A stretch of 64,000 nucleotides of DNA from the IMG/VR virus record IMGVR_UViG_3300042261_002385, positions 1 through 64,000 of that record; one strand, 5' to 3'. The notes below the pieces were generated by a model. That model worked only from the letters and a program-made list of their open reading frames with translations, was not told where the DNA came from and did no database searches. Shown here piece by piece: positions 17,997-63,338 of the stretch. Positions within the stretch are counted from its first letter, which is position 1, and every line of letters starts with the position of its first letter. The position numbers and the translations under genes are program-made.

Positions 17997-18005
17997 ATTT
18001 CTAAT

Positions 18006-18890: not shown

Positions 18891-18966
18891 TATGTTATTT
18901 TATTTTTTTCTTTCAAAAATTGAAAAACCACATCTATCCTGTAGGTCATCAACAATATTTGTCCAA

Positions 18967-20618: not shown

Positions 20619-20631
20619 ATTTTCTTTTATT

Positions 20632-21360: not shown

Positions 21361-21361
21361 T

Positions 21362-23393: not shown

Positions 23394-23401
23394 ATTTTTT
23401 T

Positions 23402-24439: not shown

Positions 24440-24440
24440 T

Positions 24441-25121
24441 TTAATTAATTATTTTTTTTACGTATTTATAAATTGGAGTTTCCATAAACCCCTGTTTTCT
24501 AGCGTATCTATGTGCATAAGTTTGAGAATTTAAATTCAAAGAATCAATTATGAATAAAAAAGAACTCTCAATCAAGTGAGCTTCTTTGGCACATTCTATA
24601 ACTTTGATATAGTCAAAAATATTATCTGTAATATCTCTATTTGGTCTTATAATTCTAAGACCATTAGTTTGAAATTTACTAGTGTCAATTTGAAATCTAT
24701 CATCTTCGTGAACAAAAATATAATCCTGCCCATCGACCAAGTCAAAATAAGTAAATATTTTTTGTTCTCTATCAACATCTCTATCAAGTTTAAAATTAGA
24801 CCATCTAACTTCAAAATCAATTCTGAATTGGTTATAAAAGGATGCATCAAAATTTTCAGATTCCGATGAATACATATTATCAAATCCAACTATTATCACA
24901 TCATTCATATTCTTTGATTGTAAGAAATTGATAACGTCTGAGTCGGTTGGTAATGAGATAATACTTAAATTATTGAGGTCTCTATACATGAATTCAACAC
25001 TTTCTTTATTGTGTGGTTTACAAAACAAAGAAATATTTTCAAATTCACTAGCAAATTTCCTTACTAAACCATTACATATTATATGGTCGCCAAGTCCAAG
25101 ATGATGATAGATGTATTTCAT
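24441..25121 (-). CDS. putative glycosyltransferase-like protein
   Basis: HHLGLGDHIICNG N-terminus, ESSF motif, operon context. Confidence 0.55.
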   Translation of the reverse strand: MKYIYHHLGLGDHIICNGLVRKFASEFENISLFCKPHNKESVEFMYRDLNNLSIISLPTDSDVINFLQSKNMNDVIIVGFDNMYSSESENFDASFYNQFRIDFEVRWSNFKLDRDVDREQKIFTYFDLVDGQDYIFVHEDDRFQIDTSKFQTNGLRIIRPNRDITDNIFDYIKVIECAKEAHLIESSFLFIIDSLNLNSQTYAHRYARKQGFMETPIYKYVKKIIN

Positions 25122-25177
25122 TACATTTTTATTTTTTTATCATTCCGATTTCTTATGAATTTCAATGACATTTCAAA

Positions 25178-25855
25178 TTATCCGATTATATTTTTTATCA
25201 ATTTCCAATGGTCGGAATGTCTAACGTCATTTTCATCAAATATTTCACCAACGAATTCGTAATCAATTCTCTTAGTTGGAAAAGGTCTTATTTCTTGTCC
25301 AAATTTTAGATTGAACTCTGAATGCTCTAAAGATTTATCTTTGACAAATGGATAGATTACTTGACCTAAAAAATCTTGATCTATACCTTTTCTATGAAAT
25401 TGATTCCACTTTTCAATTGTTTGTGAAAAATTCACATTCCTTAATATACCATTTCGACATCCCCACATACCTCCCAGTATTGGAACAGTATGATATGGAT
25501 GATCTCTCATAATATGAAAGTCTTTATCTGATTCAAGCCACTCTTGTATGGCATTAAACTCTCTATCAGAAAACCTTGAATCACAATCTCTTGATAAATA
25601 TATGTCTACATCTGGTTCTTCAACAGCCCAGAATCTCCAGAACATACCATGAAATGAATCTTTTGATTTTACTAAAATCACTTCAACATTTTCGCCCTTT
25701 ATAGTGTCTATAAGTTCTTTATCAGAAGAATCATCTATGTAAAATCTACAAATCCAACCGGGAAAATATTTTGAAGCCAATTCTATATTTCTCAAAGCAC
25801 CAACCCAATACATAGGGTGATTGCCCCATAAAGAATAAGCAACTATATTTTTCAT
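25178..25855 (-). CDS. putative GT-A glycosyltransferase-like protein
   Basis: YSLWG, MFWRF, SRDCDSR (DxD), MRDHPYH and ILGGMWG motifs. Confidence 0.6.
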   Translation of the reverse strand: MKNIVAYSLWGNHPMYWVGALRNIELASKYFPGWICRFYIDDSSDKELIDTIKGENVEVILVKSKDSFHGMFWRFWAVEEPDVDIYLSRDCDSRFSDREFNAIQEWLESDKDFHIMRDHPYHTVPILGGMWGCRNGILRNVNFSQTIEKWNQFHRKGIDQDFLGQVIYPFVKDKSLEHSEFNLKFGQEIRPFPTKRIDYEFVGEIFDENDVRHSDHWKLIKNIIG

Positions 25856-26526
25856 TATATTTGGAAATCATTTTTTACAAAGACAGAATCCCACTGAATA
25901 TTTCCAAGAAGTCTATATCCTTTAGATTTTAAAAACTCTGTTTCTTTTTCTAATCCATAGTTGTTTTCTATAAGAAATAGTGTGATATCTACTTTATCAA
26001 AATTTATTGAATTTAGGACTTGTAGCTCAGCTCCTTCGACGTCAATTGATATAAAATCGATTGATTTTAAATCGTGTTTATCAAAAAGAGTCTCAAGTCT
26101 AACAGCCTTCATTGGAATTTCTTGACTTTTTGAAAAAAGTTCGTGGCCTTCGGGATATGATTTATACATTTCTAGCTCTCTATTAATTCTATCCAGATGT
26201 TGTGTATTGTAAAACTCCATAATACCACTAAGAACATTACAAGGACCTTCAATTGATAAAAAATTAATATCCATTTCTGTATCAGAAATAGCACAGTTTT
26301 CGAATACTGAATTAGGTCTTGGATGTTCATTTCTTTTGTTGTATTCTACTGGATTTGGTTCTATTAAAAGACCTTTCCAGTTTCTTTCTTTTTCAAAAAA
26401 CCAAGTATTAGAAGCTCCAAATCCATCAAGTGCTCCTACTTCTACGAAAACACCTTCAGTTTTACCTCTAAATATTTGTTGATCAAGAATTAAATCTTGT
26501 TGAATTTGTGATTTACTATTATTCAT
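25855..26526 (-). CDS. FkbM-family SAM methyltransferase
   Basis: FVEVGALDG, LLIEPNP and ISIDVEGAE motifs. Confidence 0.9.
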   Translation of the reverse strand: MNNSKSQIQQDLILDQQIFRGKTEGVFVEVGALDGFGASNTWFFEKERNWKGLLIEPNPVEYNKRNEHPRPNSVFENCAISDTEMDINFLSIEGPCNVLSGIMEFYNTQHLDRINRELEMYKSYPEGHELFSKSQEIPMKAVRLETLFDKHDLKSIDFISIDVEGAELQVLNSINFDKVDITLFLIENNYGLEKETEFLKSKGYRLLGNIQWDSVFVKNDFQI

Positions 26527-26530
26527 TTAT

Positions 26531-27358
26531 TTAGTCAAAAATTTTATACAAGAAAGATTTTATGTTTTCAATCTTATTATCTTCTGGAATATTATAGTCA
26601 TTGAACCAAGGTTGGTTTAACTTCTCCAAATATTTATCATCATTTTTATCAAGCTCAATTATGTATCCAATTAAGTCATCTTCACTATTAAAGTCATAAT
26701 AGTTTACAAAAGATTTAGTGTTAAACTCTTTACCAATTAGTGGATTACCCCAATATATTGGCATTGAATTGACTGTCATTGGTTCCATAATTTTTTCAGT
26801 AGTATAACCCGGATGCTCGGGTCTATACGCATTGTTTTCAAAAGATATTGTAAATTTATACTCTGATTGAAATTGTCTTTTATTTTGTACAGGTCCACCG
26901 ACGTTGTTCATAAATCTACCACCGGAATCAACTTTTTTATATTTTGATAACTTAGTAAAAAAACTATTTCTTCTGTCACAGTTACCATTTGAAACAACAA
27001 AATTGCAAAACTTTCTTTTTGCTAAATTCTTTTCTATCATTTTAGGATTTACTAAATCATAGTATCCATCATATAATAAATAATGTGGAAGACGATAATT
27101 TCTTGAATCATCTAAATAGTCAAAAGAAAAAGAGTAGTCACAATAATCTAAAGGTGGAGCAACGTTTTCTCCGGTATAGAATATTTTCTTACAATTGAGC
27201 TGTTGATGTTGATTACCAAATAAAGAAAAGAATAGATAGTCAGGATTATTTGAAATCTCAACGTCAAAATTTTCTTTAAGTAAATTATAAAAATAGTTGT
27301 CTGTTCTATTGAAACCTCCCCAAAAATCAGAGAAGTTTATTTTAATTTTTTTCTTCAT
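26531..27358 (-). CDS. GT10 alpha-1,3/4-fucosyltransferase-like
   Basis: YTGEN, RLPHY, FCNFVVSN, YKFTISFEN, YTTEKI and PIYWG motifs. Confidence 0.85.
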   Translation of the reverse strand: MKKKIKINFSDFWGGFNRTDNYFYNLLKENFDVEISNNPDYLFFSLFGNQHQQLNCKKIFYTGENVAPPLDYCDYSFSFDYLDDSRNYRLPHYLLYDGYYDLVNPKMIEKNLAKRKFCNFVVSNGNCDRRNSFFTKLSKYKKVDSGGRFMNNVGGPVQNKRQFQSEYKFTISFENNAYRPEHPGYTTEKIMEPMTVNSMPIYWGNPLIGKEFNTKSFVNYYDFNSEDDLIGYIIELDKNDDKYLEKLNQPWFNDYNIPEDNKIENIKSFLYKIFD

Positions 27359-27359
27359 A

Positions 27360-28061
27360 TTATACTAATATTCTTTTTTCAACTTCCATAAGTTTTCTTT
27401 TATTCCAAGTTATGTCATCCTCAGCCCATTTTGAATTATACGCTTGGTCAGCTTGGTCAGCATTTCTTTTACCAGCTGCATAATGAAGATGTTCAAATGT
27501 AGTCTCATCGTTTAATCTATCATCGTAAAGTAATCCTAAATCTTTTAAGTTCATGTATAACTCACAATCTGAGAACATATGATTATAAGCTGGATGATAT
27601 ATTGTCATATTTAGCTTTTTTAGACAACCATAAGTCATTATAGGTATAGTAATTGCAGCATGTAACATATTGGTAGAATCAGGTAGTTGATATCCATCTC
27701 TGACCATAAGCCCAACATCTCCTTTACCTTCTAATTTATTTACTAAATAAGTGTCCCAACCGTTGGGTGCTAAAAAATCATCTGATGCAAAAACAACTAT
27801 ATCACTATCATTACAACTTCCCATCTTGACACCTAAGTTTGAAGACAGTTGATATGATGGAAAACAAACTCCAATTTTGTTTGTATTGAGTGTAATAAGA
27901 AAATTATTTTTTAAATATTCTTTTAACTCAGAAGCATGTTGTTCCCAGTTGACAGCAACATAAGTCTGTATATTTTGTGGATTGTCAGCTCTCTTAATCC
28001 ATTCAGAGTGCATTTCTTTGAATTGAGCTGGTCTTAAAGTGCACCATAAGATATGTATCAT
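27360..28061 (-). CDS. putative GT2-like glycosyltransferase
   Basis: ASDDF DxD-like motif; YHPAYNHMFSDCEL; FEHLH. Confidence 0.6.
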   Translation of the reverse strand: MIHILWCTLRPAQFKEMHSEWIKRADNPQNIQTYVAVNWEQHASELKEYLKNNFLITLNTNKIGVCFPSYQLSSNLGVKMGSCNDSDIVVFASDDFLAPNGWDTYLVNKLEGKGDVGLMVRDGYQLPDSTNMLHAAITIPIMTYGCLKKLNMTIYHPAYNHMFSDCELYMNLKDLGLLYDDRLNDETTFEHLHYAAGKRNADQADQAYNSKWAEDDITWNKRKLMEVEKRILV

Positions 28062-29158
28062 AAGTCATTTTTAATTTTATTTACGAAATGTAAAGCACTT
28101 TCAATGACTTTGTGCATGTCGTAATATTTATATTCAGCTAATCTACCTCCGAAATAAACATTCGGAATGGTATCAGCTTCATTTTTATATTCTAAATATT
28201 TAGAATTGTTTTCTAAATCATTCACTGGATAATAAGGTTCTGTCTTAGTAGCAACATACTCTATTGGATACTCCCAAGATACCCAAGTTACTTCTGAATC
28301 AGAATTTTCAAAGTGTTTATGTTCTATTATTCTTGTCCAATCAACTTCATCACTGGTATAATTCATCATAGCTACTCCCTGATAATTATCGGCATAAAAT
28401 TTCTTGTGTTCAAATTTAGTTGTTTTATACTCTAATTCTCCAAATTTAAAATTAAAAAATGCATCTATTGGACCTGTATAGATAATTTTATCTGACAAAG
28501 AATCCCAGTGTTTTTTATTACTAAGGTAGTCTTCTTCTAATCGAACTTCAACTCCTTTGAGTAACTTATCAAATATTTGTGTATATCCACCGATTGGAAT
28601 TCCTTGGTATTTATCATTGAAGTAATTATTATCATACGTGAACCTCACCGGAAGTCTTTTAATTATCTCTTTTGGTAAATCTTTAGGATCTTTTTTCCAT
28701 TGTTTCTTTGTATAACCTTTAATTAATTTCTCATAAACGTCTCGACCTACAAGTTTAATTGCTTGTTCTTCAAGATTATTTGGATTATCTATTTCAGAAG
28801 ATTGTTTTTGAATTATGGATTTAGCTTCTTTTGGACTTGTCACACCCCATATTTTGTTGAATGTCCACATATTGAATGGTAAAGAATATAACTCACCATT
28901 GTAATTTGCTACTGGTCTTAAAGTGAAATTATTAAAGTCAACAAACTGATTTATCCAGTTCCAAACCTCATCATTAGATGTGTGAAAAATGTGAGGTCCA
29001 TAAGTATGTATATTTATATTGTCTCGGTTTTCTGTATAGCAATTACCGCCTATATGATTTCTTTTTTCTAGAACTAAACATTTTTTTCCTAACTTGTTTA
29101 ATTCATAAGCACATATTGAACCAAAAAATCCACTTCCAACAATTATAAAATCATACAT
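28058..29158 (-). CDS. glf: UDP-galactopyranose mutase
   Basis: GSGFFG, HIGGNCY, YGPHIFHT, YQGIP, TRIIEHKHF, PYYP and GRLAEYKYYDM motifs. Confidence 0.95.
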   Translation of the reverse strand: MYDFIIVGSGFFGSICAYELNKLGKKCLVLEKRNHIGGNCYTENRDNINIHTYGPHIFHTSNDEVWNWINQFVDFNNFTLRPVANYNGELYSLPFNMWTFNKIWGVTSPKEAKSIIQKQSSEIDNPNNLEEQAIKLVGRDVYEKLIKGYTKKQWKKDPKDLPKEIIKRLPVRFTYDNNYFNDKYQGIPIGGYTQIFDKLLKGVEVRLEEDYLSNKKHWDSLSDKIIYTGPIDAFFNFKFGELEYKTTKFEHKKFYADNYQGVAMMNYTSDEVDWTRIIEHKHFENSDSEVTWVSWEYPIEYVATKTEPYYPVNDLENNSKYLEYKNEADTIPNVYFGGRLAEYKYYDMHKVIESALHFVNKIKNDL

Positions 29159-29160
29159 AC

Positions 29161-30198
29161 TTATTTTTGATTTTTTATATCATTAATAATCATCAATTTG
29201 ACAAGTTGCTCAAATTTAATTTTAGGTTGCCATCCTAATATATTTTTAGCTTTTGTATAATCACCAAGTAAAATATTTACTTCAGCTGGTCTGTAGTATT
29301 TTTCATCTACTTCTATGATTGTCAATCCGTTATCTAAAATACCTCTTTCAGAAACTCCTTCTCCAACCCAATTGATATTCCATCCACATTCTTTACAAGC
29401 TAATTCGACAAACTCTTTTATAGTATGAGTTTCTCCGGTGGCTAAAACATAATCATCACCTACTTCTTGTTGAAGCATCATCCACATTCCCTCTACAAAA
29501 TCTTTTGCGTGACCCCAGTCTCTCTTAGAATAAAGATTACCTAATTTCAAAATAGGAAAATCTTGACGACCTTCATCTAAGTACTTTTTGATTTTAGCAA
29601 GTCCTAATGTAATTTTTCTAGTAACAAACGTTTCACCTCTTCTTTCACCTTCATGATTAAATAATATACCATTACTAATGTGCATACCGTATGATTCTCT
29701 ATAGTTTTTTGTAATCCAAAGTCCATAAATTTTTGCAACACCATAAGGGCTTCTAGGATGCATTGGTGAAACTTCTGTATATCCAGATTCAGGCATGTTA
29801 TAACCCATACCCCCATATAATTCAGAAGTTGATGCTTGATAAACTTTTGATTTAGGACAGTGGTTTTTTACAGCCTCTAATATAGATAGTGTTCCAAGTC
29901 CATCACACTGAGCAGTATAATAAGGTATTTCAAAACTTACTTTAACATGAGATTGAGCAGCCAAGTTATAAACTTCATCTGGTTGTATTTGTGAAACAAG
30001 ATTAGAAATTACTAATGGATCAGTAACATCTCCGTAATGAAGTGTGAGTTTATCAAAGATGTGGTCTATTCTATCGGTATTAAACGTAGAAGTTCTTCTT
30101 ATAATACCATGCACTTCGTAATCTTTTTCTAGTAATAATTCAGCAAGATGAGATCCATCCATACCTGTAATTCCTGTAATTAGTGCGATTTTTTTCAT
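29161..30198 (-). CDS. gmd: GDP-mannose 4,6-dehydratase
   Basis: ITGITGMDG, LAAQSHVKVSF, QASTSELYG, SPYGVAK and FNHE..RRGETFVTRK motifs. Confidence 0.97.
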   Translation of the reverse strand: MKKIALITGITGMDGSHLAELLLEKDYEVHGIIRRTSTFNTDRIDHIFDKLTLHYGDVTDPLVISNLVSQIQPDEVYNLAAQSHVKVSFEIPYYTAQCDGLGTLSILEAVKNHCPKSKVYQASTSELYGGMGYNMPESGYTEVSPMHPRSPYGVAKIYGLWITKNYRESYGMHISNGILFNHEGERRGETFVTRKITLGLAKIKKYLDEGRQDFPILKLGNLYSKRDWGHAKDFVEGMWMMLQQEVGDDYVLATGETHTIKEFVELACKECGWNINWVGEGVSERGILDNGLTIIEVDEKYYRPAEVNILLGDYTKAKNILGWQPKIKFEQLVKLMIINDIKNQK

Positions 30199-30199
30199 T

Positions 30200-31069
30200 T
30201 TATATTTTAGTTTTTATATAATCTTTTAGATTTTGTTTAGCAGACCAACCTATTCTATAAAAGGTTTCTTCCCAATTAGATTCGGTGTGAAGTCCTTCAT
30301 TTCTTCTGAGTGGTGTAAATTTAATCTTAGAATCATCATTTTTTACAATCATCATAGCCAAGTCAATAATTTTGATAGGATTTCCCATACCTAAATCAAA
30401 GTTATCAGCTTTCCACTCTCCTTCACTTATCTTTATCAAACCATCACAAATATCATTTACTGATGTAAAATCTCTTGATTGTTGACCATCACCAACTACA
30501 GTCAATTTTTGACCACTTCTCATTTGAGACAAGAATTTAGCAACAACAGTAGCCCATTCACCTTTATTTGGCTCGCGGTTACCGTAAACATTATAGAAGG
30601 TGGCCATAGCACAGTTTAATCCATAACACTCAGCATACATTTTTAAAACACCTTCTCCTACTACTTTTGAAAAAGTGTATGGGCTAATATAATCAGAGCC
30701 ATGATTCTTAGAAGATGTTGTTGAGTATACAACAATACCTGAATCGGATTTGTGTGCGAATTCCATAATTTTCATAGTCCCAAGTGCATTAGACTCAAAC
30801 CACTGCATTGGATCATCAAATGAAGGTTGGATTCTAGCTTCAGCAGCTAAATGAAATATTCTATCATATCTTTTGCCTTTTAAGACATCAAAAATGTGTA
30901 AGATGTCTGATACATAATATTTGGCTTTGGAATTTTTATAATCAATTGAAGATGAGGTAGAACTTAAGTTATCCAGCACATCGACTTCGAATCCTAAGTC
31001 AACTAACTTATCAACTAAATTCGAACCAACAAAACCAAGACCACCAGTTACTAAAACTTTATTTGACAT
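30200..31069 (-). CDS. NAD-dependent epimerase/dehydratase (extended SDR)
   Basis: TGGLGFVGS, HLAA, SPYTFSK (YxxxK), NVYG and RDFT motifs. Confidence 0.85.
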   Translation of the reverse strand: MSNKVLVTGGLGFVGSNLVDKLVDLGFEVDVLDNLSSTSSSIDYKNSKAKYYVSDILHIFDVLKGKRYDRIFHLAAEARIQPSFDDPMQWFESNALGTMKIMEFAHKSDSGIVVYSTTSSKNHGSDYISPYTFSKVVGEGVLKMYAECYGLNCAMATFYNVYGNREPNKGEWATVVAKFLSQMRSGQKLTVVGDGQQSRDFTSVNDICDGLIKISEGEWKADNFDLGMGNPIKIIDLAMMIVKNDDSKIKFTPLRRNEGLHTESNWEETFYRIGWSAKQNLKDYIKTKI

Positions 31070-31979
31070 ACTCTGCGTAAGTTCTTTCTAATCCTTCTCT
31101 TAAAGGTGTTTTATAAACCCAACCTAATTCCTTTAATTTAGAAACGTCAGATAATTTCTTTGGAGTGCCATCTGGCTTGTCTGTATTGAAATAAATATCA
31201 CCTTGGAATCCAATAACATCTTTGACTAAATAGGACAATTCTTTAATTGTTAAATATTCACCTGTTCCAATATTTACTATTTCAGATGAATCATAATTTT
31301 GCATAAGATAGACACAAGCATCAGCTAAATCATCGACATACAAAAATTCTCTCATAGGTGTTCCTGTTCCCCAGATTTCAACTACATCTCTATTTTCAAT
31401 TTTAGCTTCATGAAATTTTCTAATAAGGGCTGGTAAAACGTGTGAGTTATTTAAGTCGTAATTATCGTTTGGTCCATATAAATTTGTTGGCATAACTGAA
31501 ATAAAATTATCACCATATTGTTTATTGAAATCCTGACACATTTTTATACCAGATATTTTAGCTATCGCATAAGCATCATTAGTTGGTTCTAACAAACCAG
31601 TCAAAAGATATTCTTCTTTTATTGGCTGTGAACTTAATTTTGGATAAATACAAGTGGAACCTAAAAAGAGTAACTTTTTACAATGGTTATCATGAGCTGC
31701 TTTGATGATATTTGATTGTATCATTATATTCTCATAGATAAAGTCAGCTCTAAAATCATCATTAGCTTTTATACCACCGACTTTTGCGGCAGCTAAAAAA
31801 ACATACTCAGGCTTTTCAAAGTGAAAAAAATGATTTACTTGAAACTGATTTGTCAAATTCACCTCTTTTCTGGATTTTGTTATTATGTTAGTAAATCCTA
31901 ACTCTTTGAGTTTTCTTACTATTGCTGAACCGACCATTCCATTATGACCAGCTACATAAATTTTTGAATCTTTATTCAT
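31059..31979 (-). CDS. fcl: GDP-L-fucose synthase
   Basis: AGHNGMVGSA, AAAKVGGI, LGSTCIYP, YAIAK, PTNLYGPNDN, SHVLPAL and REFLYVDD motifs. Confidence 0.97.
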   Translation of the reverse strand: MNKDSKIYVAGHNGMVGSAIVRKLKELGFTNIITKSRKEVNLTNQFQVNHFFHFEKPEYVFLAAAKVGGIKANDDFRADFIYENIMIQSNIIKAAHDNHCKKLLFLGSTCIYPKLSSQPIKEEYLLTGLLEPTNDAYAIAKISGIKMCQDFNKQYGDNFISVMPTNLYGPNDNYDLNNSHVLPALIRKFHEAKIENRDVVEIWGTGTPMREFLYVDDLADACVYLMQNYDSSEIVNIGTGEYLTIKELSYLVKDVIGFQGDIYFNTDKPDGTPKKLSDVSKLKELGWVYKTPLREGLERTYAEYVK

Positions 31980-37116: not shown

Positions 37117-37204
37117 TGGGAAAGGAGTGGACTCGAACCACCGAAGATCTATTGAGACCAGTCACATTACTATGTAACTCCATTTGCCGCTCTGGAACTT
37201 CCCC
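37117..37204 (-). tRNA. atypical tRNA-Tyr-type gene with 8-nt anticodon loop (AUAGUAAU)
   Basis: Type II cloverleaf: GGGGAAG/CTTTCCC, A73, variable arm GGTCT-CAAT-AGATC, anticodon stem GTTAC/GTGAC. Confidence 0.75.
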
Positions 37205-55309: not shown

Positions 55310-55532
55310 AAATATTCAATGAAACTCATAAAATTCTAGTCTATAATCAGCATATAATAACTTAGAAGAGTAAATACACATTAAATTTACACATATGCAA
55401 TATATAGATTGTTGTGCTTTGCATAATAAAATTGCTCGACCGGCCCATGGTAGATGGGGGTTTCTGAGAGTTGAATAGTGAGTGTGGAAGATTCTTCAAG
55501 TGAGTGAAAAATTATAAAAATAGTTTTTTGCC

Positions 55533-58500
55533 ATGAGAAATTTTCTTTCTTGTTTTTTTTTATTTCTAACATCTTATCTTTTTTCTCAAAGTTGTTTACA
55601 CACACTTTACATGACCGACACATATGGTGATGGCTGGAATGGTAATTATGCGTCAGTTTCTGTGAACGGCGTTACAGTAATTTCTAACGTGACTTTAAAC
55701 AGTGGATTAGGACCAGCAACTGTCACATTTAATGCAACAGCCGGTCAAACAATAAGAGTGTGGAGATCTATCACTGGTTCTTGGACTAACGAGTGTCAAA
55801 TCCGCGTAACTAGTAGCACAGGTGCAACAGTAATAGCTCTACAAACTTTACAACCCGGTTCACCAACATCAGGAGGATCGACAGGTTCAGCTCAGTGTTC
55901 AGCCGGTGGCGGTGGATCAGCGACCTTAGTTCCTTATAGTGGATTCAACTCAGTAAATTGTGGAACAAACACAACACTCTATGACCACGGAGGTCAATTT
56001 GGTAATTACTCAAACAATGCAAATGGATATACTGTATTAAATAACGGAGGTTCGGCTGTAATATCTCTTAACGGAACTTCATCCGGTGAATCCTGTTGTG
56101 ATAGAGTAAGGATTTATTTAGGCATAGGAACTGGAGGAGCTTTAATTGGAACGTATTGGATGAATTCAAATATACCGAACATCAACTCATCTCCTGGTCA
56201 ACCTTTGACTGTTCAGTTTCTTTCAGATGGTTCAGTCACAGGAAGTGGATTCACCATAAACGTGACTTATTCAGGCAACTGTTCATCTGGTGCTCCTCCA
56301 GATCCTTCATCTATATCATCAACAAGTGCTACGATATGCACTGGACAATCAGTGACATTAACAGCGAATGGTTCAGTAGGAACTACTTATTGGTTTACGA
56401 ATGGTTGTAATACCGTAGGTCAAATTGGTACAGGTAATTCTATCACAGTCAATCCAAACACAACTACGACCTACTGGGCTAGAAACTTCAATTCCGGCTT
56501 CTGGTCTTCAGGTTGTGCTCAATACACAGTTTCAGTCACATCACTACCACAACCACCAAACCAATTAACTTATACTATCAACTGCGGAGTATCACCAACA
56601 CTTACAGCGGTCGGTGGAGCGGGAAATTACCAGTGGTGGTCTAACTCAAACGCTACTGGCTTACTGTGGTCTGGACAAACATATAATCCAGGAGCGTTAA
56701 ATCAAAATACGACTTTTTGGGTTACTACATCGAATGGTGTTTGTAACTCGACAACTAGTGCCTATCAAGTAAATACTACAGCATTAACTCAACCAACAGC
56801 AAACAACACCTCAGTGAATTGTGGAAGTTCAACCACTTTGAGCATCACAAATGCGGCAAGTAATGTCAATTGGTATACCAATTCTAATGGAACAGGACAA
56901 GTTGGTAGTGGATCAACATTTACAACACCTCAACTCACTACTAATACGACTTATTATGTTGGTTCAGGTTCTGGCGCATGTGCAACACCACTTACTCCGG
57001 TTACTGTTAGTGTAAATAATAATCTAGCACAACCTACATCAAACAACACTTCTATTAATTGTGGACAGACTTCTACACTAACCGCTTCTGGTGGAACTGG
57101 AACTTACGCCTGGTATTCTAATTCAAATGCAACTGGTCAACTCGGAACAGGTGCAAATTTTACAACACCACAACTTACAACAAATACTACTTATTATGTC
57201 ACTTCAACTGCTGGATCGGCTACTACTCAAAGCGTTGGTTTCAACAATTGTTACGCCATAAATAACTGGTCACTTCAACATTTAAACGGAGGAAATGGTT
57301 CAGTCAACACTACTGGATCACCAAATAGTATACAACTTACTGGACCTGATGGAACCGGTGGTAACTCTTATACATTATATCAAATTACTGTTGCAGCGAC
57401 AGGAACCATAAGTTGGAACTGGACAGTTTCTCACAATGACTGTAGTTATGACACCTATGGTTATAGAATAAACGGAACGGATTATCCATTGGCAACTTGT
57501 AGTGCTTCAGGTTCGACTTCAGTGAATGTAACGGCTGGTCAAACATTTGCCTTTTACGGAAGATCTCACGATGGTTGTTGCGGAACTTTTACTGCAACAA
57601 TCTCTAACTTTAACAAACCTTGCTCTGGCCAAGCTTGTTTCTCTCAACCTGTAGCTGTCACAGTAACGGTGAATCCGTTAACCGCGCCTGTAGTAAATAA
57701 CACTTCTATTAATTGTGGTTCTACTGCGACGATAAACGCTTCTGGTAATGGAACTATAACCTGGTATCAAAATTCTAACCTGACTGGATCTGTTGCCACC
57801 GGAAATCAATGGACAACTCCGACTCTTACAACATCAACAACATATTATTTACAATCAACTAGTGGTTCATGTCAGAGCTCGTCGACTCCGGTTACGGTGA
57901 CCGTAAACCCACTAGCGTCTCCTACTGTTTCCGGAAACACATCATTGTGTGTTGGAAATAATACTACACTCTCAGCGTCTGGTGGTAGTAGCTATACCTG
58001 GTTTGCAAACTCTAACGGAACTGGTCAATTAGGAACCGGATCAAACTATACCACTCCAAATTTAAATTCAAATACGACATATTATGTTCAATCAGGAACT
58101 GCTCCTCAGACACAAACCGCAGTATTCAATATTAATAGTTTTGGCCAATTAATCAATATGAACTCAAATTGTGGAGGCGGTTCTTATTATAATGGATGTA
58201 GTGGATCAACAGGGTTTAGTTGGGTTAGTTCTATACCAGCTGGAGCTACTATTACATCAGTTCAGATTCAGTTATCGGTCGGTGTTGAGTGTCAAGCAGG
58301 AACGAGGTCAACAACACTCAATGGTGTTGGTGGTCCTACTTTCAACACAATTGGTAATTGTAGCTGTTCAGGTAGTGTAAACCCAATAATTACCCTAAAT
58401 ATGAATGTGGCTAATTATATAGCCAATGGAACTAATCAATTTTTAATTACTAATCCACCAAGTTGCTTTGGTTTATTCAGTGGTAGTGGTGGATTACCAG

Positions 58501-60722
58501 GTCTATTTGCTAGAGTGACCGTAACTTATCAAACAGGGTCAGCTTGTGTTTCACAACTAACCGCCGTGCCTATAACAGTAAATGCGAGTCCAACTATCAC
58601 AGCAACGGCAACAAATCCTACAATATGCCAAGGTCAATCTACACAACTAAATGCATCAGGAGCTACAACTTATAGTTGGTCAGGGGGAGCTGGTAATGGC
58701 TCACAAATTTCTGTTAGCCCAAATGCTACCACAACTTATACGGTTACCGGTCAAGTGGCCGGTGGATGTCAAGGTCAGACACAATTGACTATAACGGTAA
58801 ATCCCCTGCCAAATTCAAATGCCGGTCCTGATATCATAGGATCTGTCACTTGTGGAAAAGATAATATTAACTTACAAGCTACTTCACTTTCTGCCGGACA
58901 AACAGGAGCATGGCAGATTATAAGTGGTCCGAACGGAATCGCTAGTTTGAACACACCAACAACTTTATTTCAAGGACAATATGGAGCAACTTATACACTT
59001 CAATGGAATGTTACAAATACTACTACAGGTTGTGTTGGGACAGACCAAATGATTCTCACATTTAATCAACCAAACGCGGCTTCTTTATCCGGTTTAATCG
59101 GAAACGGTGACCTACTCTGGTGTGGCTTAACAAGTAATGATTGGTCGACATCAACCAACTGGTATCAGAATATGGGTAGTTATTATCAAAGAATGTCAGG
59201 AGCTGCTCAACCTGTAATCTCTAGCCAAGTGTTTACACTTAATCAAGCAACTGGTGGTATATGTATAGGAAGTCAAAACCCAACACTGAGTATCACAAGT
59301 AACGCATACGATGTTTTTGTCAATCCTGGAATCACTCTAAATCTTACAAATGATAGTTTGAATATTGCTCATGACCTAAACAATAGTGGAACAATCGTAG
59401 CATCTACTGGATTAGTCAATTTCACCGGTAGTCTCAACTCAAATATTAACGGTTCCGGTTCAACCCAATTGTTTAATATGAGAGTTAACAAATCCGCGGG
59501 TTCCACACTGACACTAAACCAACCAGTCAGTGTTACAAATAATCTTAATATGGTTCAGGGTAATATTTTTACTACAACGACTAATTTACTAACTTTAGGT
59601 TCAAGTAGTGCTAATCCCGGAACACTCGTCTATAACACAGGAACTATCGTAGGTCCTTTCAGAAGATATTTTTCAAATTCAACTACAAATGGAAATGGTG
59701 GTTTGTTTCCAGTTGGAACTCAAACTTACAACAGATACTCTGATTTTAATTTCACATCTACTCCTGGCACAAATCAGTTCTTAACGGTTCAATATAAAAC
59801 AGGAGCGCCTCTGGTTGGAGGAACTCCACTATACAATGGTCTTCCATTAGTAGTTTCTGGCTCATTGATTCAAAATTACTCAATAGATGGATATTGGGAA
59901 GTTACACCTACTTCAAATAATTACTCGTCTTCAATTTGTCAAACACCTTACAATGTCACTCTATTCGCTAATAATCTAACCGGTATGAACACACCCCAGA
60001 TTTGTAGAATAATTAAATCACCGGGTTCAAATCACACAACTTGGCAAGCTTGTGGCGCACACGTAAGTATTCCTGGTAACGCAAATGCACAAGCATTTTT
60101 GATTACAAGTAACAACACACAAGGATTCAGTTGGTTTAATATTGGAACTCCAAATTCACAGGCACTACCTGTTGAGCTTTTGAGTTTTGATGGTGAGTGT
60201 CAGAATGAATTTATTAAATTAAATTGGTCAACTTCTACTGAACACAATTCATCTTATTTCGAAGTTCAAAAATCTATCGATGGAATTTCTTGGAGAAGTT
60301 TGACTACTTTGTCAGCTGCTGGTAATTCAACTCAAAAGTTAGATTATACAACTTCTGATTTCGAAAAAATCGAGGGAAATAATTACTATAAGCTTGTTCA
60401 ATTTGACTATGATGGCCAGTCTAAAGAATATGGACCAATAAATATCAGTTGTGAATCAGTGTCAAAAGGATATTTTTCAGTATTTCCGAATCCAAGTTCA
60501 GGTCAATTCCAATTGGTCTTGAATGATAAAAATTTGCTCGGTGAAAGTGAGGTTATAGTCAATGACACTAAGGGTTCGCAAATTTTTAACAAAATAATTA
60601 ATGTGAAACCTGGAATAAACACCTTTTTAATCGAAGAATTAAAAAATTCAAATGGTTTATACTATATATACATCAGAAACAGTAGTGTAACAACATCTGT
60701 AATAAAAATTGAAATTAGATAA
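55533..60722 (+). CDS. 1729-aa T9SS-secreted adhesin (signal peptide, CUB, Ig-like repeats, type A CTD)
   Basis: Signal peptide ...YLFS/Q; CUB-like (YDHGG..YSNN..FLSDGSVTGSGF); repeats ..TFTTPQLTTNTTYYV; LPVELLSF; FSVFPNPSSG CTD. Confidence 0.9.
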   Translation: MRNFLSCFFLFLTSYLFSQSCLHTLYMTDTYGDGWNGNYASVSVNGVTVISNVTLNSGLGPATVTFNATAGQTIRVWRSITGSWTNECQIRVTSSTGATVIALQTLQPGSPTSGGSTGSAQCSAGGGGSATLVPYSGFNSVNCGTNTTLYDHGGQFGNYSNNANGYTVLNNGGSAVISLNGTSSGESCCDRVRIYLGIGTGGALIGTYWMNSNIPNINSSPGQPLTVQFLSDGSVTGSGFTINVTYSGNCSSGAPPDPSSISSTSATICTGQSVTLTANGSVGTTYWFTNGCNTVGQIGTGNSITVNPNTTTTYWARNFNSGFWSSGCAQYTVSVTSLPQPPNQLTYTINCGVSPTLTAVGGAGNYQWWSNSNATGLLWSGQTYNPGALNQNTTFWVTTSNGVCNSTTSAYQVNTTALTQPTANNTSVNCGSSTTLSITNAASNVNWYTNSNGTGQVGSGSTFTTPQLTTNTTYYVGSGSGACATPLTPVTVSVNNNLAQPTSNNTSINCGQTSTLTASGGTGTYAWYSNSNATGQLGTGANFTTPQLTTNTTYYVTSTAGSATTQSVGFNNCYAINNWSLQHLNGGNGSVNTTGSPNSIQLTGPDGTGGNSYTLYQITVAATGTISWNWTVSHNDCSYDTYGYRINGTDYPLATCSASGSTSVNVTAGQTFAFYGRSHDGCCGTFTATISNFNKPCSGQACFSQPVAVTVTVNPLTAPVVNNTSINCGSTATINASGNGTITWYQNSNLTGSVATGNQWTTPTLTTSTTYYLQSTSGSCQSSSTPVTVTVNPLASPTVSGNTSLCVGNNTTLSASGGSSYTWFANSNGTGQLGTGSNYTTPNLNSNTTYYVQSGTAPQTQTAVFNINSFGQLINMNSNCGGGSYYNGCSGSTGFSWVSSIPAGATITSVQIQLSVGVECQAGTRSTTLNGVGGPTFNTIGNCSCSGSVNPIITLNMNVANYIANGTNQFLITNPPSCFGLFSGSGGLPGLFARVTVTYQTGSACVSQLTAVPITVNASPTITATATNPTICQGQSTQLNASGATTYSWSGGAGNGSQISVSPNATTTYTVTGQVAGGCQGQTQLTITVNPLPNSNAGPDIIGSVTCGKDNINLQATSLSAGQTGAWQIISGPNGIASLNTPTTLFQGQYGATYTLQWNVTNTTTGCVGTDQMILTFNQPNAASLSGLIGNGDLLWCGLTSNDWSTSTNWYQNMGSYYQRMSGAAQPVISSQVFTLNQATGGICIGSQNPTLSITSNAYDVFVNPGITLNLTNDSLNIAHDLNNSGTIVASTGLVNFTGSLNSNINGSGSTQLFNMRVNKSAGSTLTLNQPVSVTNNLNMVQGNIFTTTTNLLTLGSSSANPGTLVYNTGTIVGPFRRYFSNSTTNGNGGLFPVGTQTYNRYSDFNFTSTPGTNQFLTVQYKTGAPLVGGTPLYNGLPLVVSGSLIQNYSIDGYWEVTPTSNNYSSSICQTPYNVTLFANNLTGMNTPQICRIIKSPGSNHTTWQACGAHVSIPGNANAQAFLITSNNTQGFSWFNIGTPNSQALPVELLSFDGECQNEFIKLNWSTSTEHNSSYFEVQKSIDGISWRSLTTLSAAGNSTQKLDYTTSDFEKIEGNNYYKLVQFDYDGQSKEYGPINISCESVSKGYFSVFPNPSSGQFQLVLNDKNLLGESEVIVNDTKGSQIFNKIINVKPGINTFLIEELKNSNGLYYIYIRNSSVTTSVIKIEIR

Positions 60723-61772
60723 ATGAAATTAAAGTTTTTATTATTGTTCATATTAAGTTGTCTACTGAATATTTCATTTTCACAAACACAGACCGTTAAT
60801 TTCAATTATACTGGTTCAGTTCAGACTTGGACTGTGCCACAGTGTGTAACTTCCATCAACGTAGTTGTAGCAGGTGCCAAAGGTGGTGGAGCTACAGGAG
60901 GAAATGGAGCTAGACTAACAGCAACTATCCCAGTCACACCGGGTCAAGTTTTGAATATTTATGTAGGAGGACAAGGCAGCTGTGGTAACAATTCAGGTGG
61001 TTGGAACGGTGGTGGAACAGGACATGCATCAAATCCAGCAAATGTTAATTATAATTCTTGTGGTGGCGGTGGAGCGACTGATATCAGAATCGGAGGAAAC
61101 GCACTAGTGAATAGAGTTATCGTTGCCGGAGGTGGTGGTGGAAAAAGTGGTGGTTCTTCTCCAGTCGCAGGTGGAGCAGCCAACTGTCAAAACGGCGCAC
61201 CAGGTGTTAGCACATACGGAGCAGGAGGCGGTGGTGGAACACAAGCTGCAGGCGGAGCTGGAGGAGCTCCTTGGGCAGGAACACCTCCTGGAGGTCAAGC
61301 CGGAACATTAGGTCAGGGAGGAAATGGTGGTTTCTGGTCAACTGCCTCTGGTGGAGGTGGTGGTGGTGGATACTACGGCGGTGGTGGCGGAGGTAACGAC
61401 GGCTGTTGCACTGGTTCAAATGGAGGTGGTGGTGGAGGTGCTGGTTCTTCTCTTCTACCAGCAGGAGGAACTTGTCTACCATCAAATAACACCGGAAATG
61501 GTTATGCTTCTATCACTTATACACCAGTCAATTTAGTTATAAATCCAACATCAACAAATGTGACTTGTTTTGGACTTTGTAATGGAACAGCAAATGCTAA
61601 TTATCCAGGTGCGACTTATCTGTGGTCAAATGGAGCAACAACACAATCAATAAGTAATCTCTGTCCAGGAAATTATACAGTAACTGTTAATTTGAACGGT
61701 TGCACGGCTACTGGCAGTGTCACTATAACACAACCACCTCAAATAGTTTTAGGCCCGATAAGCCACAACTAA
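60723..61772 (+). CDS. exported glycine-rich-domain protein with SprB-like repeat, ends PISHN
   Basis: Signal peptide ...ISFS/Q; GGGGATDIR and VAGGGGG motifs; YLWSNGATTQSISNLCPGNYTVTV. Confidence 0.85.
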   Translation: MKLKFLLLFILSCLLNISFSQTQTVNFNYTGSVQTWTVPQCVTSINVVVAGAKGGGATGGNGARLTATIPVTPGQVLNIYVGGQGSCGNNSGGWNGGGTGHASNPANVNYNSCGGGGATDIRIGGNALVNRVIVAGGGGGKSGGSSPVAGGAANCQNGAPGVSTYGAGGGGGTQAAGGAGGAPWAGTPPGGQAGTLGQGGNGGFWSTASGGGGGGGYYGGGGGGNDGCCTGSNGGGGGGAGSSLLPAGGTCLPSNNTGNGYASITYTPVNLVINPTSTNVTCFGLCNGTANANYPGATYLWSNGATTQSISNLCPGNYTVTVNLNGCTATGSVTITQPPQIVLGPISHN

Positions 61773-61790
61773 TAAAAATTAAATGAAAAA

Positions 61791-62357
61791 ATGAAAAATT
61801 TATTTTTACTACTATTGACTCTTTTGACAACAACAGTATTTGGTCAACTTGTTACAACAAATCCTGATACTGTATGTTATCAGACCCAGGCACTTTCTCA
61901 GTATCAAGTTACTTCAGTTGGTGCTGGAACTTACACTTGGACAGTTCCTGCCTGTGCCACTATAACTTCAGGTCAAGGCACGAATCAAATTCAAGTAAAC
62001 TGGTCTAACTGTCCTCCAGGATTAATCAACAATGCGATAAGTGTTGTTTACACTTCACAAGCTGGATGTCCTTCACCAGCTGTCAATTTGAATGTTTTGA
62101 TATACCAAGTCATACCAACTATAACACCTATTGGTCCTTTCTGTGTAACTGATCCTTGTGTTGCACTATCTGGATTACCAGCTGGTGGGACATGGACCGG
62201 AAATGGTGTTGTAAATGGTCAGTTCTGTCCTGGACAAGCTGGTCCAGGAGCTGCTACAATCACCTATACTTATACTAACAGTGGTTGTTCATTTACAGCA
62301 ACTACAAATACAGGTGTCTCTCCACAACCTACATTGACACCAATACAACACAATTAA
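61791..62357 (+). CDS. exported PKD/Ig-like protein, ends PIQHN
   Basis: Signal peptide ...TVFG/Q; YTWTVP...ITSGQGTNQIQVNW; GGTWTGNGV...F.P. Confidence 0.85.
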   Translation: MKNLFLLLLTLLTTTVFGQLVTTNPDTVCYQTQALSQYQVTSVGAGTYTWTVPACATITSGQGTNQIQVNWSNCPPGLINNAISVVYTSQAGCPSPAVNLNVLIYQVIPTITPIGPFCVTDPCVALSGLPAGGTWTGNGVVNGQFCPGQAGPGAATITYTYTNSGCSFTATTNTGVSPQPTLTPIQHN

Positions 62358-62364
62358 AAATTAT

Positions 62365-62934
62365 ATGAAACTATTTTTATTTTTGTTCTTACTTATTAGT
62401 CTAAATGTTTTTAGTCAACACTCGTTTGAAATATGTGAAAATTCAAATACGTTTACATATTCAACCACAATTGACTTAAACGGAACAGTAGAATGGTTTT
62501 TAAACGGTAGTTCAATTGGTCAGGGTCTTTCAATTGATATCACATATGATGAACCTGGAGAATTTCAATTAGTAGCAATGGGTTATAACGATTTAGGTTG
62601 TCCAGGAACACCACAAGTTTTAGATATTATAGTTACTCAATGTGATCCACTTATTTATTGGGTTCCTAATTCATTCACACCTGATGGAAATGAATTTAAT
62701 CAAACTTGGGGTCCTATATTGACAAGCGGTATTTCAGTTAATAATTTTTCACTAACAATTTATAATAGATGGGGAGCTATCATCTGGGAGTCCAAAGATG
62801 TCAATACTAAATGGGATGGAACATATGGAGGTTTTTTAGTTCCAGATGGAACATACTCTTGGATTATGAAATTAGATATGATAGACAATGATGGTAAAAA
62901 ATTAATTACCGGTCACGTTACAATCGTTAGATAA
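62365..62934 (+). CDS. exported protein with gliding-motility-associated (type B, CHU_C) T9SS CTD
   Basis: Signal peptide ...NVFS/Q; VPNSFTPDG..N; IYNRWG..IWES; WDGTY; PDGTYSW; GHVTIVR. Confidence 0.9.
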   Translation: MKLFLFLFLLISLNVFSQHSFEICENSNTFTYSTTIDLNGTVEWFLNGSSIGQGLSIDITYDEPGEFQLVAMGYNDLGCPGTPQVLDIIVTQCDPLIYWVPNSFTPDGNEFNQTWGPILTSGISVNNFSLTIYNRWGAIIWESKDVNTKWDGTYGGFLVPDGTYSWIMKLDMIDNDGKKLITGHVTIVR

Positions 62935-63011: not shown

Positions 63012-63338
63012 TTAATGACTATGTATTACATTTTCTATTTTCTCATACAGTTTTATTTTCGGTAATACACCAACTTGTCTATCAACTACTTCACCATTTT
63101 TAAAAAAGATTATTGTAGGAATTCCTCTTACCCCATATTTATCAGGACTGATTGGATTCTCATCAATGTTTACTTTATAAACCACAATTTTTTCTTCTAA
63201 ATCATTTGAAGCTTCTTCTAATGCTGGAGCTAATGCTTTACAAGGATTACACCAATCGGCCCAAAAATCGACTAAAATTAATTTATCTGAACTTTTAATT
63301 ATATCTTGAAAGTTATCATCTGTTATACTTGCTACCAT
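63012..63338 (-). CDS. trxA: thioredoxin
   Basis: LVDFWADWCNPC; YGVRGIPT. Confidence 0.92.
   Translation of the reverse strand: MVASITDDNFQDIIKSSDKLILVDFWADWCNPCKALAPALEEASNDLEEKIVVYKVNIDENPISPDKYGVRGIPTIIFFKNGEVVDRQVGVLPKIKLYEKIENVIHSH

What the first reader, a model, noticed from the sequence alone, without database searches (positions are those of the whole stretch)
55533..62934. Phage-encoded four-gene type IX secretion (T9SS) adhesin cassette
Seen: four co-oriented, Cys/Thr/Gly-rich ORFs, visibly more GC-rich than the flanks. Each has a Sec signal peptide followed by Gln (FS/Q, FS/Q, FG/Q, FS/Q). One has a type A CTD (LPVELLSF...FPNP), another a type B CHU_C CTD. They sit between a neck gene and a tRNA cluster, behind the phage-type AATATATA box (55399-55406). 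Established: these CTDs route proteins through the Bacteroidota T9SS to the cell surface, and Gln after signal peptidase I is the Bacteroidota pyroglutamate Q-rule. Type B substrates usually need a PorP/SprF partner, and none is encoded here. Inference: the phage uses the host T9SS to coat the infected cell with its own adhesins. Possible roles are clumping with uninfected cells to aid transmission, blocking receptors, jamming gliding, or deterring grazers.
Basis: partly seen in the sequence, partly recalled or inferred. Interest (0 to 1): 0.85.

Follow-up and report, generated by a model that had tools for sequence, protein, structure and literature searches.

The report
Phage-encoded T9SS surface-protein operon
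A huge freshwater phage of Flavobacteria-like hosts carries an operon of secreted Ig-repeat proteins that bear the host's type IX secretion tags, and three of them look like one surface adhesin split into head, stalk and anchor, which suggests the phage rebuilds the surface of the cell it infects.

Summary
Four abutting + strand ORFs (A 1729, B 349, C 188, D 189 aa) each start with a signal peptide followed by Gln. D carries a firm type B T9SS sorting domain. A carries a type A domain that only just reaches the cut-off. The window is the first 64 kb of a 436-kb IMG/VR contig related to the 634-642-kb Mahaphage genomes. Three independent assemblies carry the same gene order, and GC3 and codon usage match the phage, so it is not a chimera.

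The cassette is two units. A belongs to a phage family of type A cargo preceded by a 23-nt leader element that is exact in 40 viral contigs. B-C-D is a conserved module found in more than 80 viral contigs and 460 protein clusters, and C has no match in 185,579 bacterial species genomes. It consists of a swappable head, a two-Ig stalk and an anchor, and only the anchor has a sorting domain. Head and stalk always end in His-Asn-stop. Fused single-gene versions in related phages and in Crocinitomicaceae are collinear with the gene order.

Display on the infected cell's surface through the host T9SS is the best reading, but export, subunit assembly and purpose are untested.

The parts
55399..55406 (+). 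AATATATA box, a putative phage promoter or start-proximal motif
   Evidence: 17 copies in the window against 9.1 expected. Most lie 5-26 nt upstream of an ATG on the same strand. This one lies 127 nt upstream of A.
55435..55465 (+). Conserved leader element, part 1 (31 nt, contains a short CCCAT/ATGGG hairpin)
   Evidence: Identical in relatives whose intergenic DNA has otherwise diverged. The 23-nt core is exact in 40 IMG/VR contigs and always lies 60-95 nt before the ATG of a signal-peptide+Gln protein. No Rfam match.
55490..55505 (+). Conserved leader element, part 2 (GATTCTTCAAGTGAGT)
   Evidence: Nearly invariant in the 26-sequence alignment A6.
55533..60722 (+). Gene A: 1729-aa secreted Ig-repeat protein, a type A T9SS cargo candidate. 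Signal peptide 55533-55586, then Gln.
   Evidence: Seven PF19081 Ig_7 matches, 185 bits. The GDGWNG N-terminal domain and the C-terminus are conserved in relatives, while the middle repeats vary (816-819 aa in L009 and L010).
60480..60719 (+). Type A C-terminal sorting domain of A (residues about 1650-1729)
   Evidence: TIGR04183 23.5 bits against cut-off 23, model positions 1-71 of 72. Five of 8 homologous tails match, best E 8e-8. PF18962 17.5 bits, below its cut-off.
60723..61772 (+). Gene B: 349-aa head subunit with no CTD. Signal peptide 60723-60782, Gly-rich head about 60867-61451, one SprB-like repeat about 61548-61760.
   Evidence: PF12810 44 bits. PHROG matches of unknown function. 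Residues 1-267 are 62-71% identical to the N-terminal heads of 890-2060-aa bacterial CHU_C proteins. A's stop abuts B's start (TAAATG).
61749..61769 (+). C-terminal tail of B (LGPISHN, then stop)
   Evidence: The same [IVL]xH[ND]-stop tail ends 165 of 1350 ORFs in the phage loci, essentially all head- or stalk-type, and 0 of 544 ORFs in bacterial loci.
61791..62357 (+). Gene C: 188-aa stalk subunit with no CTD. Signal peptide 61791-61844, then two Ig-like domains.
   Evidence: PF19408 PKD_6 38 bits. AlphaFold model pLDDT 90 with two beta-sandwich domains. PDB matches are tandem-Ig adhesion molecules. 460 protein clusters, all unnamed. No match in GTDB species genomes.
62334..62354 (+). C-terminal tail of C (LTPIQHN, then stop)
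   Evidence: His is invariant and Asn nearly so in 30 aligned homologues. All four synonymous codon pairs are used and the stop is always TAA.
62365..62934 (+). Gene D: 189-aa anchor subunit. Signal peptide 62365-62415, Ig-like domain about 62416-62640, then the CTD.
   Evidence: AlphaFold model pLDDT 88.5 with a seven-strand Ig domain plus a C-terminal sandwich. D always lies directly after C, and in most relatives its ATG overlaps C's stop (TAATG).
62662..62931 (+). Type B C-terminal sorting domain of D (residues 100-189)
   Evidence: PF13585 55.5 bits (cut-off 27) and TIGR04131 47 bits (cut-off 35).

Best explanation
This is a phage operon, transcribed from upstream of A through D, that sends phage-made proteins out through the host's own export route.

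All four proteins would cross the inner membrane by Sec. Signal peptidase I would then cut them to expose Gln (the Bacteroidota Q-rule).

A is a giant Ig-repeat protein with a type A sorting domain. It would pass the T9SS and, like host type A cargo, be fixed to the outer surface.

B, C and D are one adhesin-like fibre encoded as three polypeptides. B is a swappable head, here a Gly-rich domain copied from host adhesins. C is a two-Ig stalk. D is an Ig domain plus a type B sorting domain that engages the T9SS and a host PorP/SprF-type anchor. The invariant His-Asn tails of B and C are proposed to dock each subunit onto the N-terminal domain of the next, so that the CTD-less parts travel and are displayed with D.

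The outcome would be a remodelled surface on the infected Crocinitomicaceae-like cell. The likeliest purpose is to mask or replace T9SS-dependent surface structures that phages use as receptors. That would exclude competitors or keep progeny from sticking to infected cells and debris.

Shown: the gene structure, the sorting domains, conservation, phage origin and collinearity with fused homologues. Inferred: export, subunit assembly, surface display and purpose.

The confidence of 0.6 is for the core claim, T9SS-dependent display of phage proteins on the host surface. I put tail-mediated assembly of B, C and D at about 0.35-0.4, and the receptor-masking purpose lower still.
For: - Sorting domains.
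- Signal peptide plus invariant Gln in the head, C and D families. The Q-rule itself is described in PMC5837995 and PMC10653852.
- Phage origin and contiguity: the 746-aa gene and the peptidase are 58-68% identical and syntenic in LR745206.1 and LR756502.1. Three independent assemblies show the same gene order at 100% identity. One contig spans 54000-59999 with no differences. Nineteen DNA runs from more than 10 studies hold 58-100% of the junction's words. GC3 and codon usage match the phage.
- Conservation: head-C-D is adjacent in about 80 IMG/VR contigs, mostly with a TAATG overlap between C and D.
- One protein in pieces: LR745206.1 has a single 732-aa ORF with SprB repeat, C-like and D-like parts in the same order. 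L201, L189, L202 and L207 are likewise fused. The 632-aa His-Asp-tailed (LGPISHD) head of L055 aligns end to end with the first 658 aa of a 1670-aa fused CHU_C protein of LR756502.1 (44% identity, E 7e-121). The C-to-D junction is collinear with the fused form without any indel, and the tails correspond to PKD_6 model positions that the split stalk lacks.
- Host: the nearest cellular CTDs and B-like heads are in Crocinitomicaceae, Fluviicola and Brumimicrobium, inside 800-2100-aa proteins.
- A and the type B module are linked in two different gene orders.
- Receptor argument: Flavobacterium phage resistance maps to gliding and T9SS genes, per the title of bioRxiv 10.1101/2020.10.02.323337 (listed).
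Against: - No experiment or expression time course is available. The RNA evidence is a few 151-nt contigs at depth 3 in one marine metatranscriptome, where DNA carry-over is possible.
- A's type A CTD only just reaches threshold, and only when the tail is scored alone.
- B and C have no known T9SS signal. Piggyback export through the T9SS is not an established mechanism, as far as I know.
- The model of D shows a complete seven-strand Ig domain starting at its mature N-terminus, so there is no obvious empty groove for a donated strand.
- No PorP/SprF gene was found in the window. Only matches stronger than about E 4e-16 would have been displayed, and the remaining 372 kb of the contig was not seen.
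- In many relatives the module lies among tail genes (sheath, tube), which also fits a virion-related role.
Confidence: 0.6

Rival explanations
1. Only D, and perhaps A, reaches the cell surface. B and C are periplasmic proteins with a separate job, such as interfering with the T9SS or gliding apparatus, envelope changes before lysis, or periplasmic superinfection exclusion. The His-Asn tail would then be a signal for something other than docking to the next subunit.
For: B and C lack any recognised CTD. D's Ig domain looks complete on its own. The His-Asn tail is absent from fused homologues, so fibre architecture does not need it.
Against: Gene order equals domain order in several independent fused homologues. 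C and D are translationally coupled. Heads are exchanged while the tail and the C-D pair stay constant. That is what a common docking interface would predict.
Confidence: 0.17
2. The proteins are virion or virion-assembly components, Ig-like decoration or fibre proteins, and the secretion signals are vestigial or serve another purpose.
For: In the L011-type contigs the module lies between tail sheath and tube genes and further tail-region genes (an unidentified ~770-890-aa ORF among them). In the window it follows a neck-like gene. B's Gly-rich domain matches PHROG families. Ig-like domains are common on phage structural proteins (my own knowledge).
Against: Three separate gene families keep intact signal peptides with the host-specific Gln at +1 and a scoring T9SS CTD across 30-67% sequence divergence. 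That argues for selection on export. Tailed-phage virions assemble in the cytoplasm.
Confidence: 0.1
3. It is host DNA, either an assembly chimera or a very recent, functionless capture of host adhesin genes.
For: B's head is 62-71% identical to bacterial proteins. GC is raised.
Against: Three independent assemblies and many runs carry both junctions. GC3 and codon use are those of the phage. C has no relative in 185,579 species genomes. The module is conserved in about 80 viral contigs.
Confidence: 0.03

Closest known systems
Type B CTD (CHU_C / TIGR04131) surface adhesins of Flavobacteriia, such as SprB, which is anchored by the PorP-like protein SprF (PMC9143113)
   Same: Signal peptide, Ig/SprB/PKD-type repeats and a C-terminal type B sorting domain. 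The nearest CTDs and head domains are in Crocinitomicaceae proteins of this kind.
   Different: Here the protein is phage-encoded and cut into three genes, each with its own signal peptide. Only the last piece carries the CTD, and the others end in a His-Asn tail that was not seen in 544 bacterial ORFs. No partner PorP/SprF gene was seen.
Type A CTD (TIGR04183) T9SS cargo, such as gingipains, whose CTD is cleaved by PorU and replaced by a link to anionic LPS (PMC8545088, PMC4804311)
   Same: A has a signal peptide and a roughly 75-aa terminal domain that aligns over the whole model.
   Different: The score is at the cut-off. The gene is phage-encoded. It is preceded by a 23-nt leader element that is exact in 40 viral contigs.
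Sortase B with substrate modules in huge phages of Gram-positive hosts (bioRxiv 10.64898/2026.10.24.761521)
   Same: A huge phage encodes signal-peptide proteins that carry the host's surface-sorting signal, proposed to display phage proteins on the bacterial surface.
   Different: That is a different secretion and anchoring system (cell-wall sortase). That preprint does not mention T9SS, and that phage brings its own sortase.
Q-rule signal-peptide proteins of Porphyromonas gingivalis phages (PMC10367356)
   Same: Phage proteins adapted to Bacteroidota Sec/SPI export, with Gln at +1.
   Different: No T9SS sorting domains are reported there. Those are temperate phages of an oral pathogen and show no split architecture.
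Phage-encoded envelope proteins such as T5 Llp and lambda Lom or Bor (my own knowledge)
   Same: Phage genes embedded in or near structural modules whose products sit in the host envelope and change adsorption or surface properties.
   Different: Those are single small lipoproteins or outer-membrane proteins exported by general pathways. They are not multi-subunit Ig fibres using a phylum-specific secretion system.

Membership tests
T9SS type B cargo (TIGR04131 / PF13585) | C-terminal domain scoring above the curated cut-offs, at the extreme C-terminus | tested here: met
   D residues 100-189: 47 bits (cut-off 35) and 55.5 bits (cut-off 27). B and C have no match.
T9SS type B cargo (TIGR04131 / PF13585) | N-terminal Sec signal peptide | tested here: met
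   Judged by eye and by a hydropathy scan. Conserved in 29 homologues. No dedicated predictor was available.
T9SS type B cargo (TIGR04131 / PF13585) | Cognate PorP/SprF-like outer-membrane partner, often encoded nearby | tested here: inconclusive
   No PorP_SprF match among the 25 strongest of 52 Pfam families found in 57 window ORFs. No recurrent neighbour occurs in the 80 closest bacterial loci either. The rest of the 436-kb contig was not examined.
T9SS type B cargo (TIGR04131 / PF13585) | Export depends on T9SS genes | not testable with these tools
   Needs expression in wild type and in gldK or sprA mutants.
T9SS type A cargo (TIGR04183 / PF18962) | C-terminal domain scoring at or above the curated cut-off | tested here: inconclusive
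   TIGR04183 gives 23.5 bits (cut-off 23) on the last 100 aa, 22.7 on the last 139 aa, and no listing for the whole protein. PF18962 gives 17.5 bits (cut-off 27). The match covers the full model, and 5 of 8 homologous tails match, best E 8e-8.
T9SS type A cargo (TIGR04183 / PF18962) | CTD cleavage by PorU and attachment to LPS | not testable with these tools
   Biochemical test.
Bacteroidota Q-rule SPI substrates | Gln at +1 after the signal-peptide cleavage site | tested here: met
   All four proteins. Gln is invariant in the C and D alignments and in head proteins. Pyroglutamate formation was not testable.
Mahaphage-type huge phages of Bacteroidota (PMC7162821) | Shared, syntenic core genes with the 634-735-kb genomes | tested here: met
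   The 746-aa protein is 63% and 58% identical, and the peptidase 68% and 61%, in the same order in LR745206.1 and LR756502.1. Matches to the 735-kb genome and to Lak phages are weaker. No capsid or terminase phylogeny was done.
Donor-strand-complemented fibres (chaperone-usher or type V pili) | Subunit Ig fold lacking a strand that the neighbouring subunit supplies | tested here: not met
   The model of D has seven strands from its first mature residue. The tails do align to PKD_6 model positions missing from the split stalk. That leaves a resemblance in logic only, not membership.

The most novel reading that the evidence does not exclude
The His-Asn tail, together with the next subunit's N-terminal domain, is a docking device. 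It lets proteins without a CTD ride through the T9SS, or assemble on the surface, attached to one CTD-bearing anchor. Huge phages would then own a modular surface-display platform with a fixed anchor and stalk and exchangeable heads, some captured from host adhesins. The T9SS would be shown to handle multi-subunit cargo.
Probability: 0.3. Interest if true: 0.85.

Novelty: new variant of a known kind. Interest (0 to 1): 0.7.

Why it matters
T9SS cargo is regarded as a chromosomal trait of Bacteroidota. Five full-text searches found no paper describing phage-encoded T9SS cargo.

This phage family is large and environmentally widespread: 460 protein clusters, viral contigs up to 436 kb, and runs from lakes, estuaries and drinking water. 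It has kept such cargo under selection.

If the proteins are exported, huge phages reprogramme the outer surface of abundant freshwater and marine Flavobacteriales. That could affect superinfection, aggregation, gliding and particle attachment.

The split architecture gives a direct experimental handle on an open question, namely what the T9SS can carry and how type B cargo is anchored. The exchangeable-head design could also be used for surface display in Bacteroidota.

Tried and rejected
- **Assembly chimera or recent transfer:** rejected by independent contigs, many runs and phage-like GC3 and codon use.
- **Stop-codon read-through or recoding joining the ORFs:** rejected. Each ORF has its own complete signal peptide, the stops are TAA (double in B), D is in another frame, and the window is densely coding under the standard code.
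- **His-Asn conservation as a by-product of a translation-coupling RNA signal:** rejected. All four synonymous codon pairs occur, and heads keep the tail even with 10-18-nt gaps before the next gene.
- **B as a lipoprotein** (an LSC resembles a lipobox): unlikely. The bacterial homologues of the head lack the Cys and have SPI-type sites with Gln.
- **Regex for a PorP/SprF N-terminal motif recalled from memory:** it hit nothing anywhere, so it is uninformative.
- **Rfam on the leader:** no match. Its predicted fold is not better than shuffles (z = -1.6).
- **PDB sequence searches of B and of A's N-terminus:** only low-complexity or CUB-like scraps.
- **NCBIfam and PHROGs on A, C and D:** nothing beyond the matches cited.
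- **Co-variation of Asn/Asp between head and stalk tails:** too few events to interpret.
Full report
**What is there**

Four + strand ORFs fill 55533-62934: A (1729 aa), B (349 aa), C (188 aa) and D (189 aa). A's TAA abuts B's ATG. B and C are 18 nt apart, and C and D are 7 nt apart. No terminator-like site lies between them on the + strand. They are most simply one transcription unit.

All four proteins begin with a basic residue, a hydrophobic core and a small-residue site followed by Gln. In a crude scan of 63 window ORFs, only these and one Rossmann-fold false positive looked like signal peptides.

The raised GC content is a composition effect. GC2 is 0.37-0.62 against 0.29 elsewhere because the proteins are rich in Gly, Thr, Ser, Ala and Cys. 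GC3 (0.19-0.24) and synonymous codon choice (r = 0.93) match the other 59 genes.

**Sorting domains**

D ends in a type B domain well above both curated cut-offs (PF13585 55.5 against 27; TIGR04131 47 against 35).

A ends in a domain that aligns over the whole type A model but scores at the threshold. TIGR04183 gives 23.5 bits (cut-off 23) on the last 100 residues and 22.7 on the last 139. PF18962 gives 17.5 bits (cut-off 27). Five of eight homologous tails from related phages match, best E 8e-8.

B has a Gly-rich domain (PF12810) and one SprB-like repeat. C has a PKD-like domain. Neither has a CTD.

AlphaFold models built on about 30 homologues are confident. C is two Ig-like domains (pLDDT 90). 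D is a seven-strand Ig domain plus a C-terminal sandwich (pLDDT 88.5). Their nearest solved structures are tandem-Ig adhesion molecules and, for D, fragments of the Aureispira grappling-hook protein and PorU.

**It is a phage, and the junctions are real**

The window is positions 1-64000 of a 436,265-bp IMG/VR contig.

The neighbouring 746-aa protein and an M28-like peptidase are 58-68% identical to, and syntenic with, genes of the 634-kb and 642-kb uncultured phages LR745206.1 and LR756502.1. These match the sizes of the largest circularised genomes in the huge-phage survey, which places all of its largest genomes in the Mahaphage clade with predicted Bacteroidetes hosts (PMC7162821). The 746-aa protein's middle part resembles the annotated neck protein of Tenacibaculum phage PTm1. 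Elsewhere the window encodes gp32-like SSB, RNR, ClpB-like and Lon-like proteins and tRNAs.

Two Logan assemblies and one JGI assembly carry peptidase, 746-aa gene, A, B, C, D and thioredoxin in the same order at 100% identity. One run's contig covers 54000-59999 without a difference. Nineteen DNA runs from more than ten studies of lakes, estuaries, drinking water and aquaculture hold 58-100% of the left junction's words.

**The cassette is two things**

*(i) The B-C-D module.* A search of IMG/VR with C returned 102 confirmed stretches. In the 80 kept, C is followed at once by a D homologue. In most, D's ATG overlaps C's stop as TAATG.

The gene before C is a secreted "head". It is a 197-aa family in 73 loci. 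Otherwise it is 173-632 aa of unrelated domains, including the window's B type and a galactose-binding-like type.

Every head and every C ends in [IVL]-x-His-Asn (rarely Asp) followed by TAA. All four synonymous codon pairs are used. This tail ends 165 of 1350 ORFs in the phage loci, 2 of 67 in the window (B and C) and 0 of 544 in bacterial loci.

C is the most conserved part (67% mean column identity, against 50% for D). It has 460 unnamed clusters in the 5.8-billion-protein collection and no relative in 185,579 species genomes.

*(ii) Gene A.* A belongs to a family with a GDGWNG-containing N-terminal domain, a variable Ig middle (816 to 1729 aa among close relatives) and a type A-like end.

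Upstream lies a leader whose 23-nt core is exact in 40 viral contigs. It always sits 60-95 nt before the ATG of a signal-peptide+Gln protein, mostly of the A family. Most of those contigs lack the B-C-D module nearby. In four contigs a fused module lies just upstream of the leader and A. The two units are thus linked in two different gene orders.

**One adhesin in three pieces**

- LR745206.1 encodes a single 732-aa protein with a signal peptide, a head, a SprB repeat, a C-like part and a D-like part with CHU_C, in that order. The link into its D-like part still resembles D's signal-peptide core.
- L201 and three other contigs carry similar fusions.
- The 632-aa tailed head of L055 aligns over its full length with the first 658 residues of a 1670-aa CHU_C protein of LR756502.1 (E 7e-121).
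- B's first 267 residues are 62-71% identical to the N-terminal heads of 890-2060-aa CHU_C proteins in Crocinitomicaceae and other Flavobacteriales MAGs.
- C's tail plus D's mature N-terminus is collinear with the fused L201 sequence without an indel.
- The PKD_6 match starts at model position 2 in the fused protein but at 7-9 in split C proteins. The missing positions correspond to the preceding subunit's tail.

Gene order therefore equals domain order, and the breaks lie in inter-domain linkers.

**Host**

The closest cellular relatives of D's CTD are overwhelmingly in Crocinitomicaceae, Fluviicola, Brumimicrobium and Crocinitomix, where the domain closes long multi-domain proteins (median about 860 aa). 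In these 80 loci no PorP/SprF-like neighbour recurs. The lack of such a gene beside D is thus normal for this lineage. It does not show that none is needed (PMC9143113).

**Mechanism proposed**

1. Sec export and SPI cleavage expose Gln (Q-rule; PMC5837995, PMC10653852).
2. A goes out through the T9SS as type A cargo.
3. D goes out as type B cargo and is held by a host PorP-like protein.
4. B and C are joined to D through their tails and displayed as head and stalk.

Everything after the sequence features is inference. The model of D shows a complete Ig domain, so classical donor-strand complementation is not indicated. What the His-Asn tail binds is unexplained.

As a purpose I favour masking or replacing T9SS-dependent surface structures that serve as phage receptors. 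Flavobacterium phage resistance maps to gliding and T9SS genes (bioRxiv 10.1101/2020.10.02.323337, by its title). The module sits beside late structural genes: a neck-like gene here, and sheath and tube genes in relatives.

The same window holds a roughly 16-kb glycan-biosynthesis cluster. That fits a wider programme of surface remodelling.

**Expression**

One marine metatranscriptome contains 151-nt contigs 97-99% identical to A and to the 746-aa gene, at depth 3. DNA carry-over cannot be excluded.

**Novelty**

Full-text searches found:
- Q-rule proteins in Porphyromonas phages (PMC10367356);
- sortase B and its substrates in huge phages (bioRxiv 10.64898/2026.10.24.761521);
- a general remark on surface-localised proteins in huge phages (PMC7162821).

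They found nothing on phage-encoded T9SS cargo or on His-Asn-tailed split cargo.

I rate this a new variant of a known kind. The components are ordinary T9SS cargo domains. The phage ownership, the split head-stalk-anchor design with an invariant tail, and the conserved leader are new.

Noticed in passing
window 55435-55465 and 55490-55505; loci L173-L212: A leader element upstream of gene A. Its 23-nt core is exact in 40 IMG/VR contigs and always lies 60-95 nt before the start of a signal-peptide+Gln protein, mostly A-family type A cargo. Third codon positions of the tiny ORF it contains (MVDGGF) are also invariant, so the constraint is on the nucleotides. No Rfam family matches.
   Followed up: partly
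window, 17 sites (e.g. 736, 2982, 6532, 9867, 39924, 53056 on +; 37781, 38662, 47297, 50350, 63356 on -): AATATATA is about twice as frequent as expected. It usually lies 5-26 nt upstream of a start codon on the same strand, which suggests a phage promoter giving very short leaders. The cassette's copy is the exception at 127 nt.
   Followed up: partly
window about 16065-31979, - strand: A run of sugar-nucleotide and glycan genes: four epimerase/dehydratase-type proteins including GDP-mannose 4,6-dehydratase, UDP-galactopyranose mutase, GT2, GT1-like and GT10 fucosyltransferases, an FkbM methyltransferase, a pfkB kinase, and E1 dehydrogenase/transketolase-like pairs. A phage-encoded surface-polysaccharide pathway may belong to the same surface-remodelling theme.
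   Followed up: partly
window 37118-37204, - strand: ARAGORN calls a tRNA of unknown identity with a four-base anticodon (agta), next to a tRNA-Met.
   Followed up: no
L082 4312-5466 and 11130-12497: This 190-kb viral contig has two further signal-peptide proteins with the His-Asn tail. One lies directly after its D gene, which hints at more than one tailed chain per genome.
   Followed up: no
window 62365-62934 (D): D has three Cys (24, 79, 93), all invariant in the family. An odd count leaves one that could be free or form an intermolecular bond. A thioredoxin gene lies next door on the other strand (63012-63338).
   Followed up: no
L003 (LR745206.1 25768-27966) and L004 (LR756502.1 514378-519390): The 634-kb and 642-kb megaphages carry fused type B cargo genes (732 aa and 1670 aa) at loci unrelated to the neck-like gene. 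The module has therefore moved within these genomes. LR745206.1 has four CHU_C-like places in all.
   Followed up: partly
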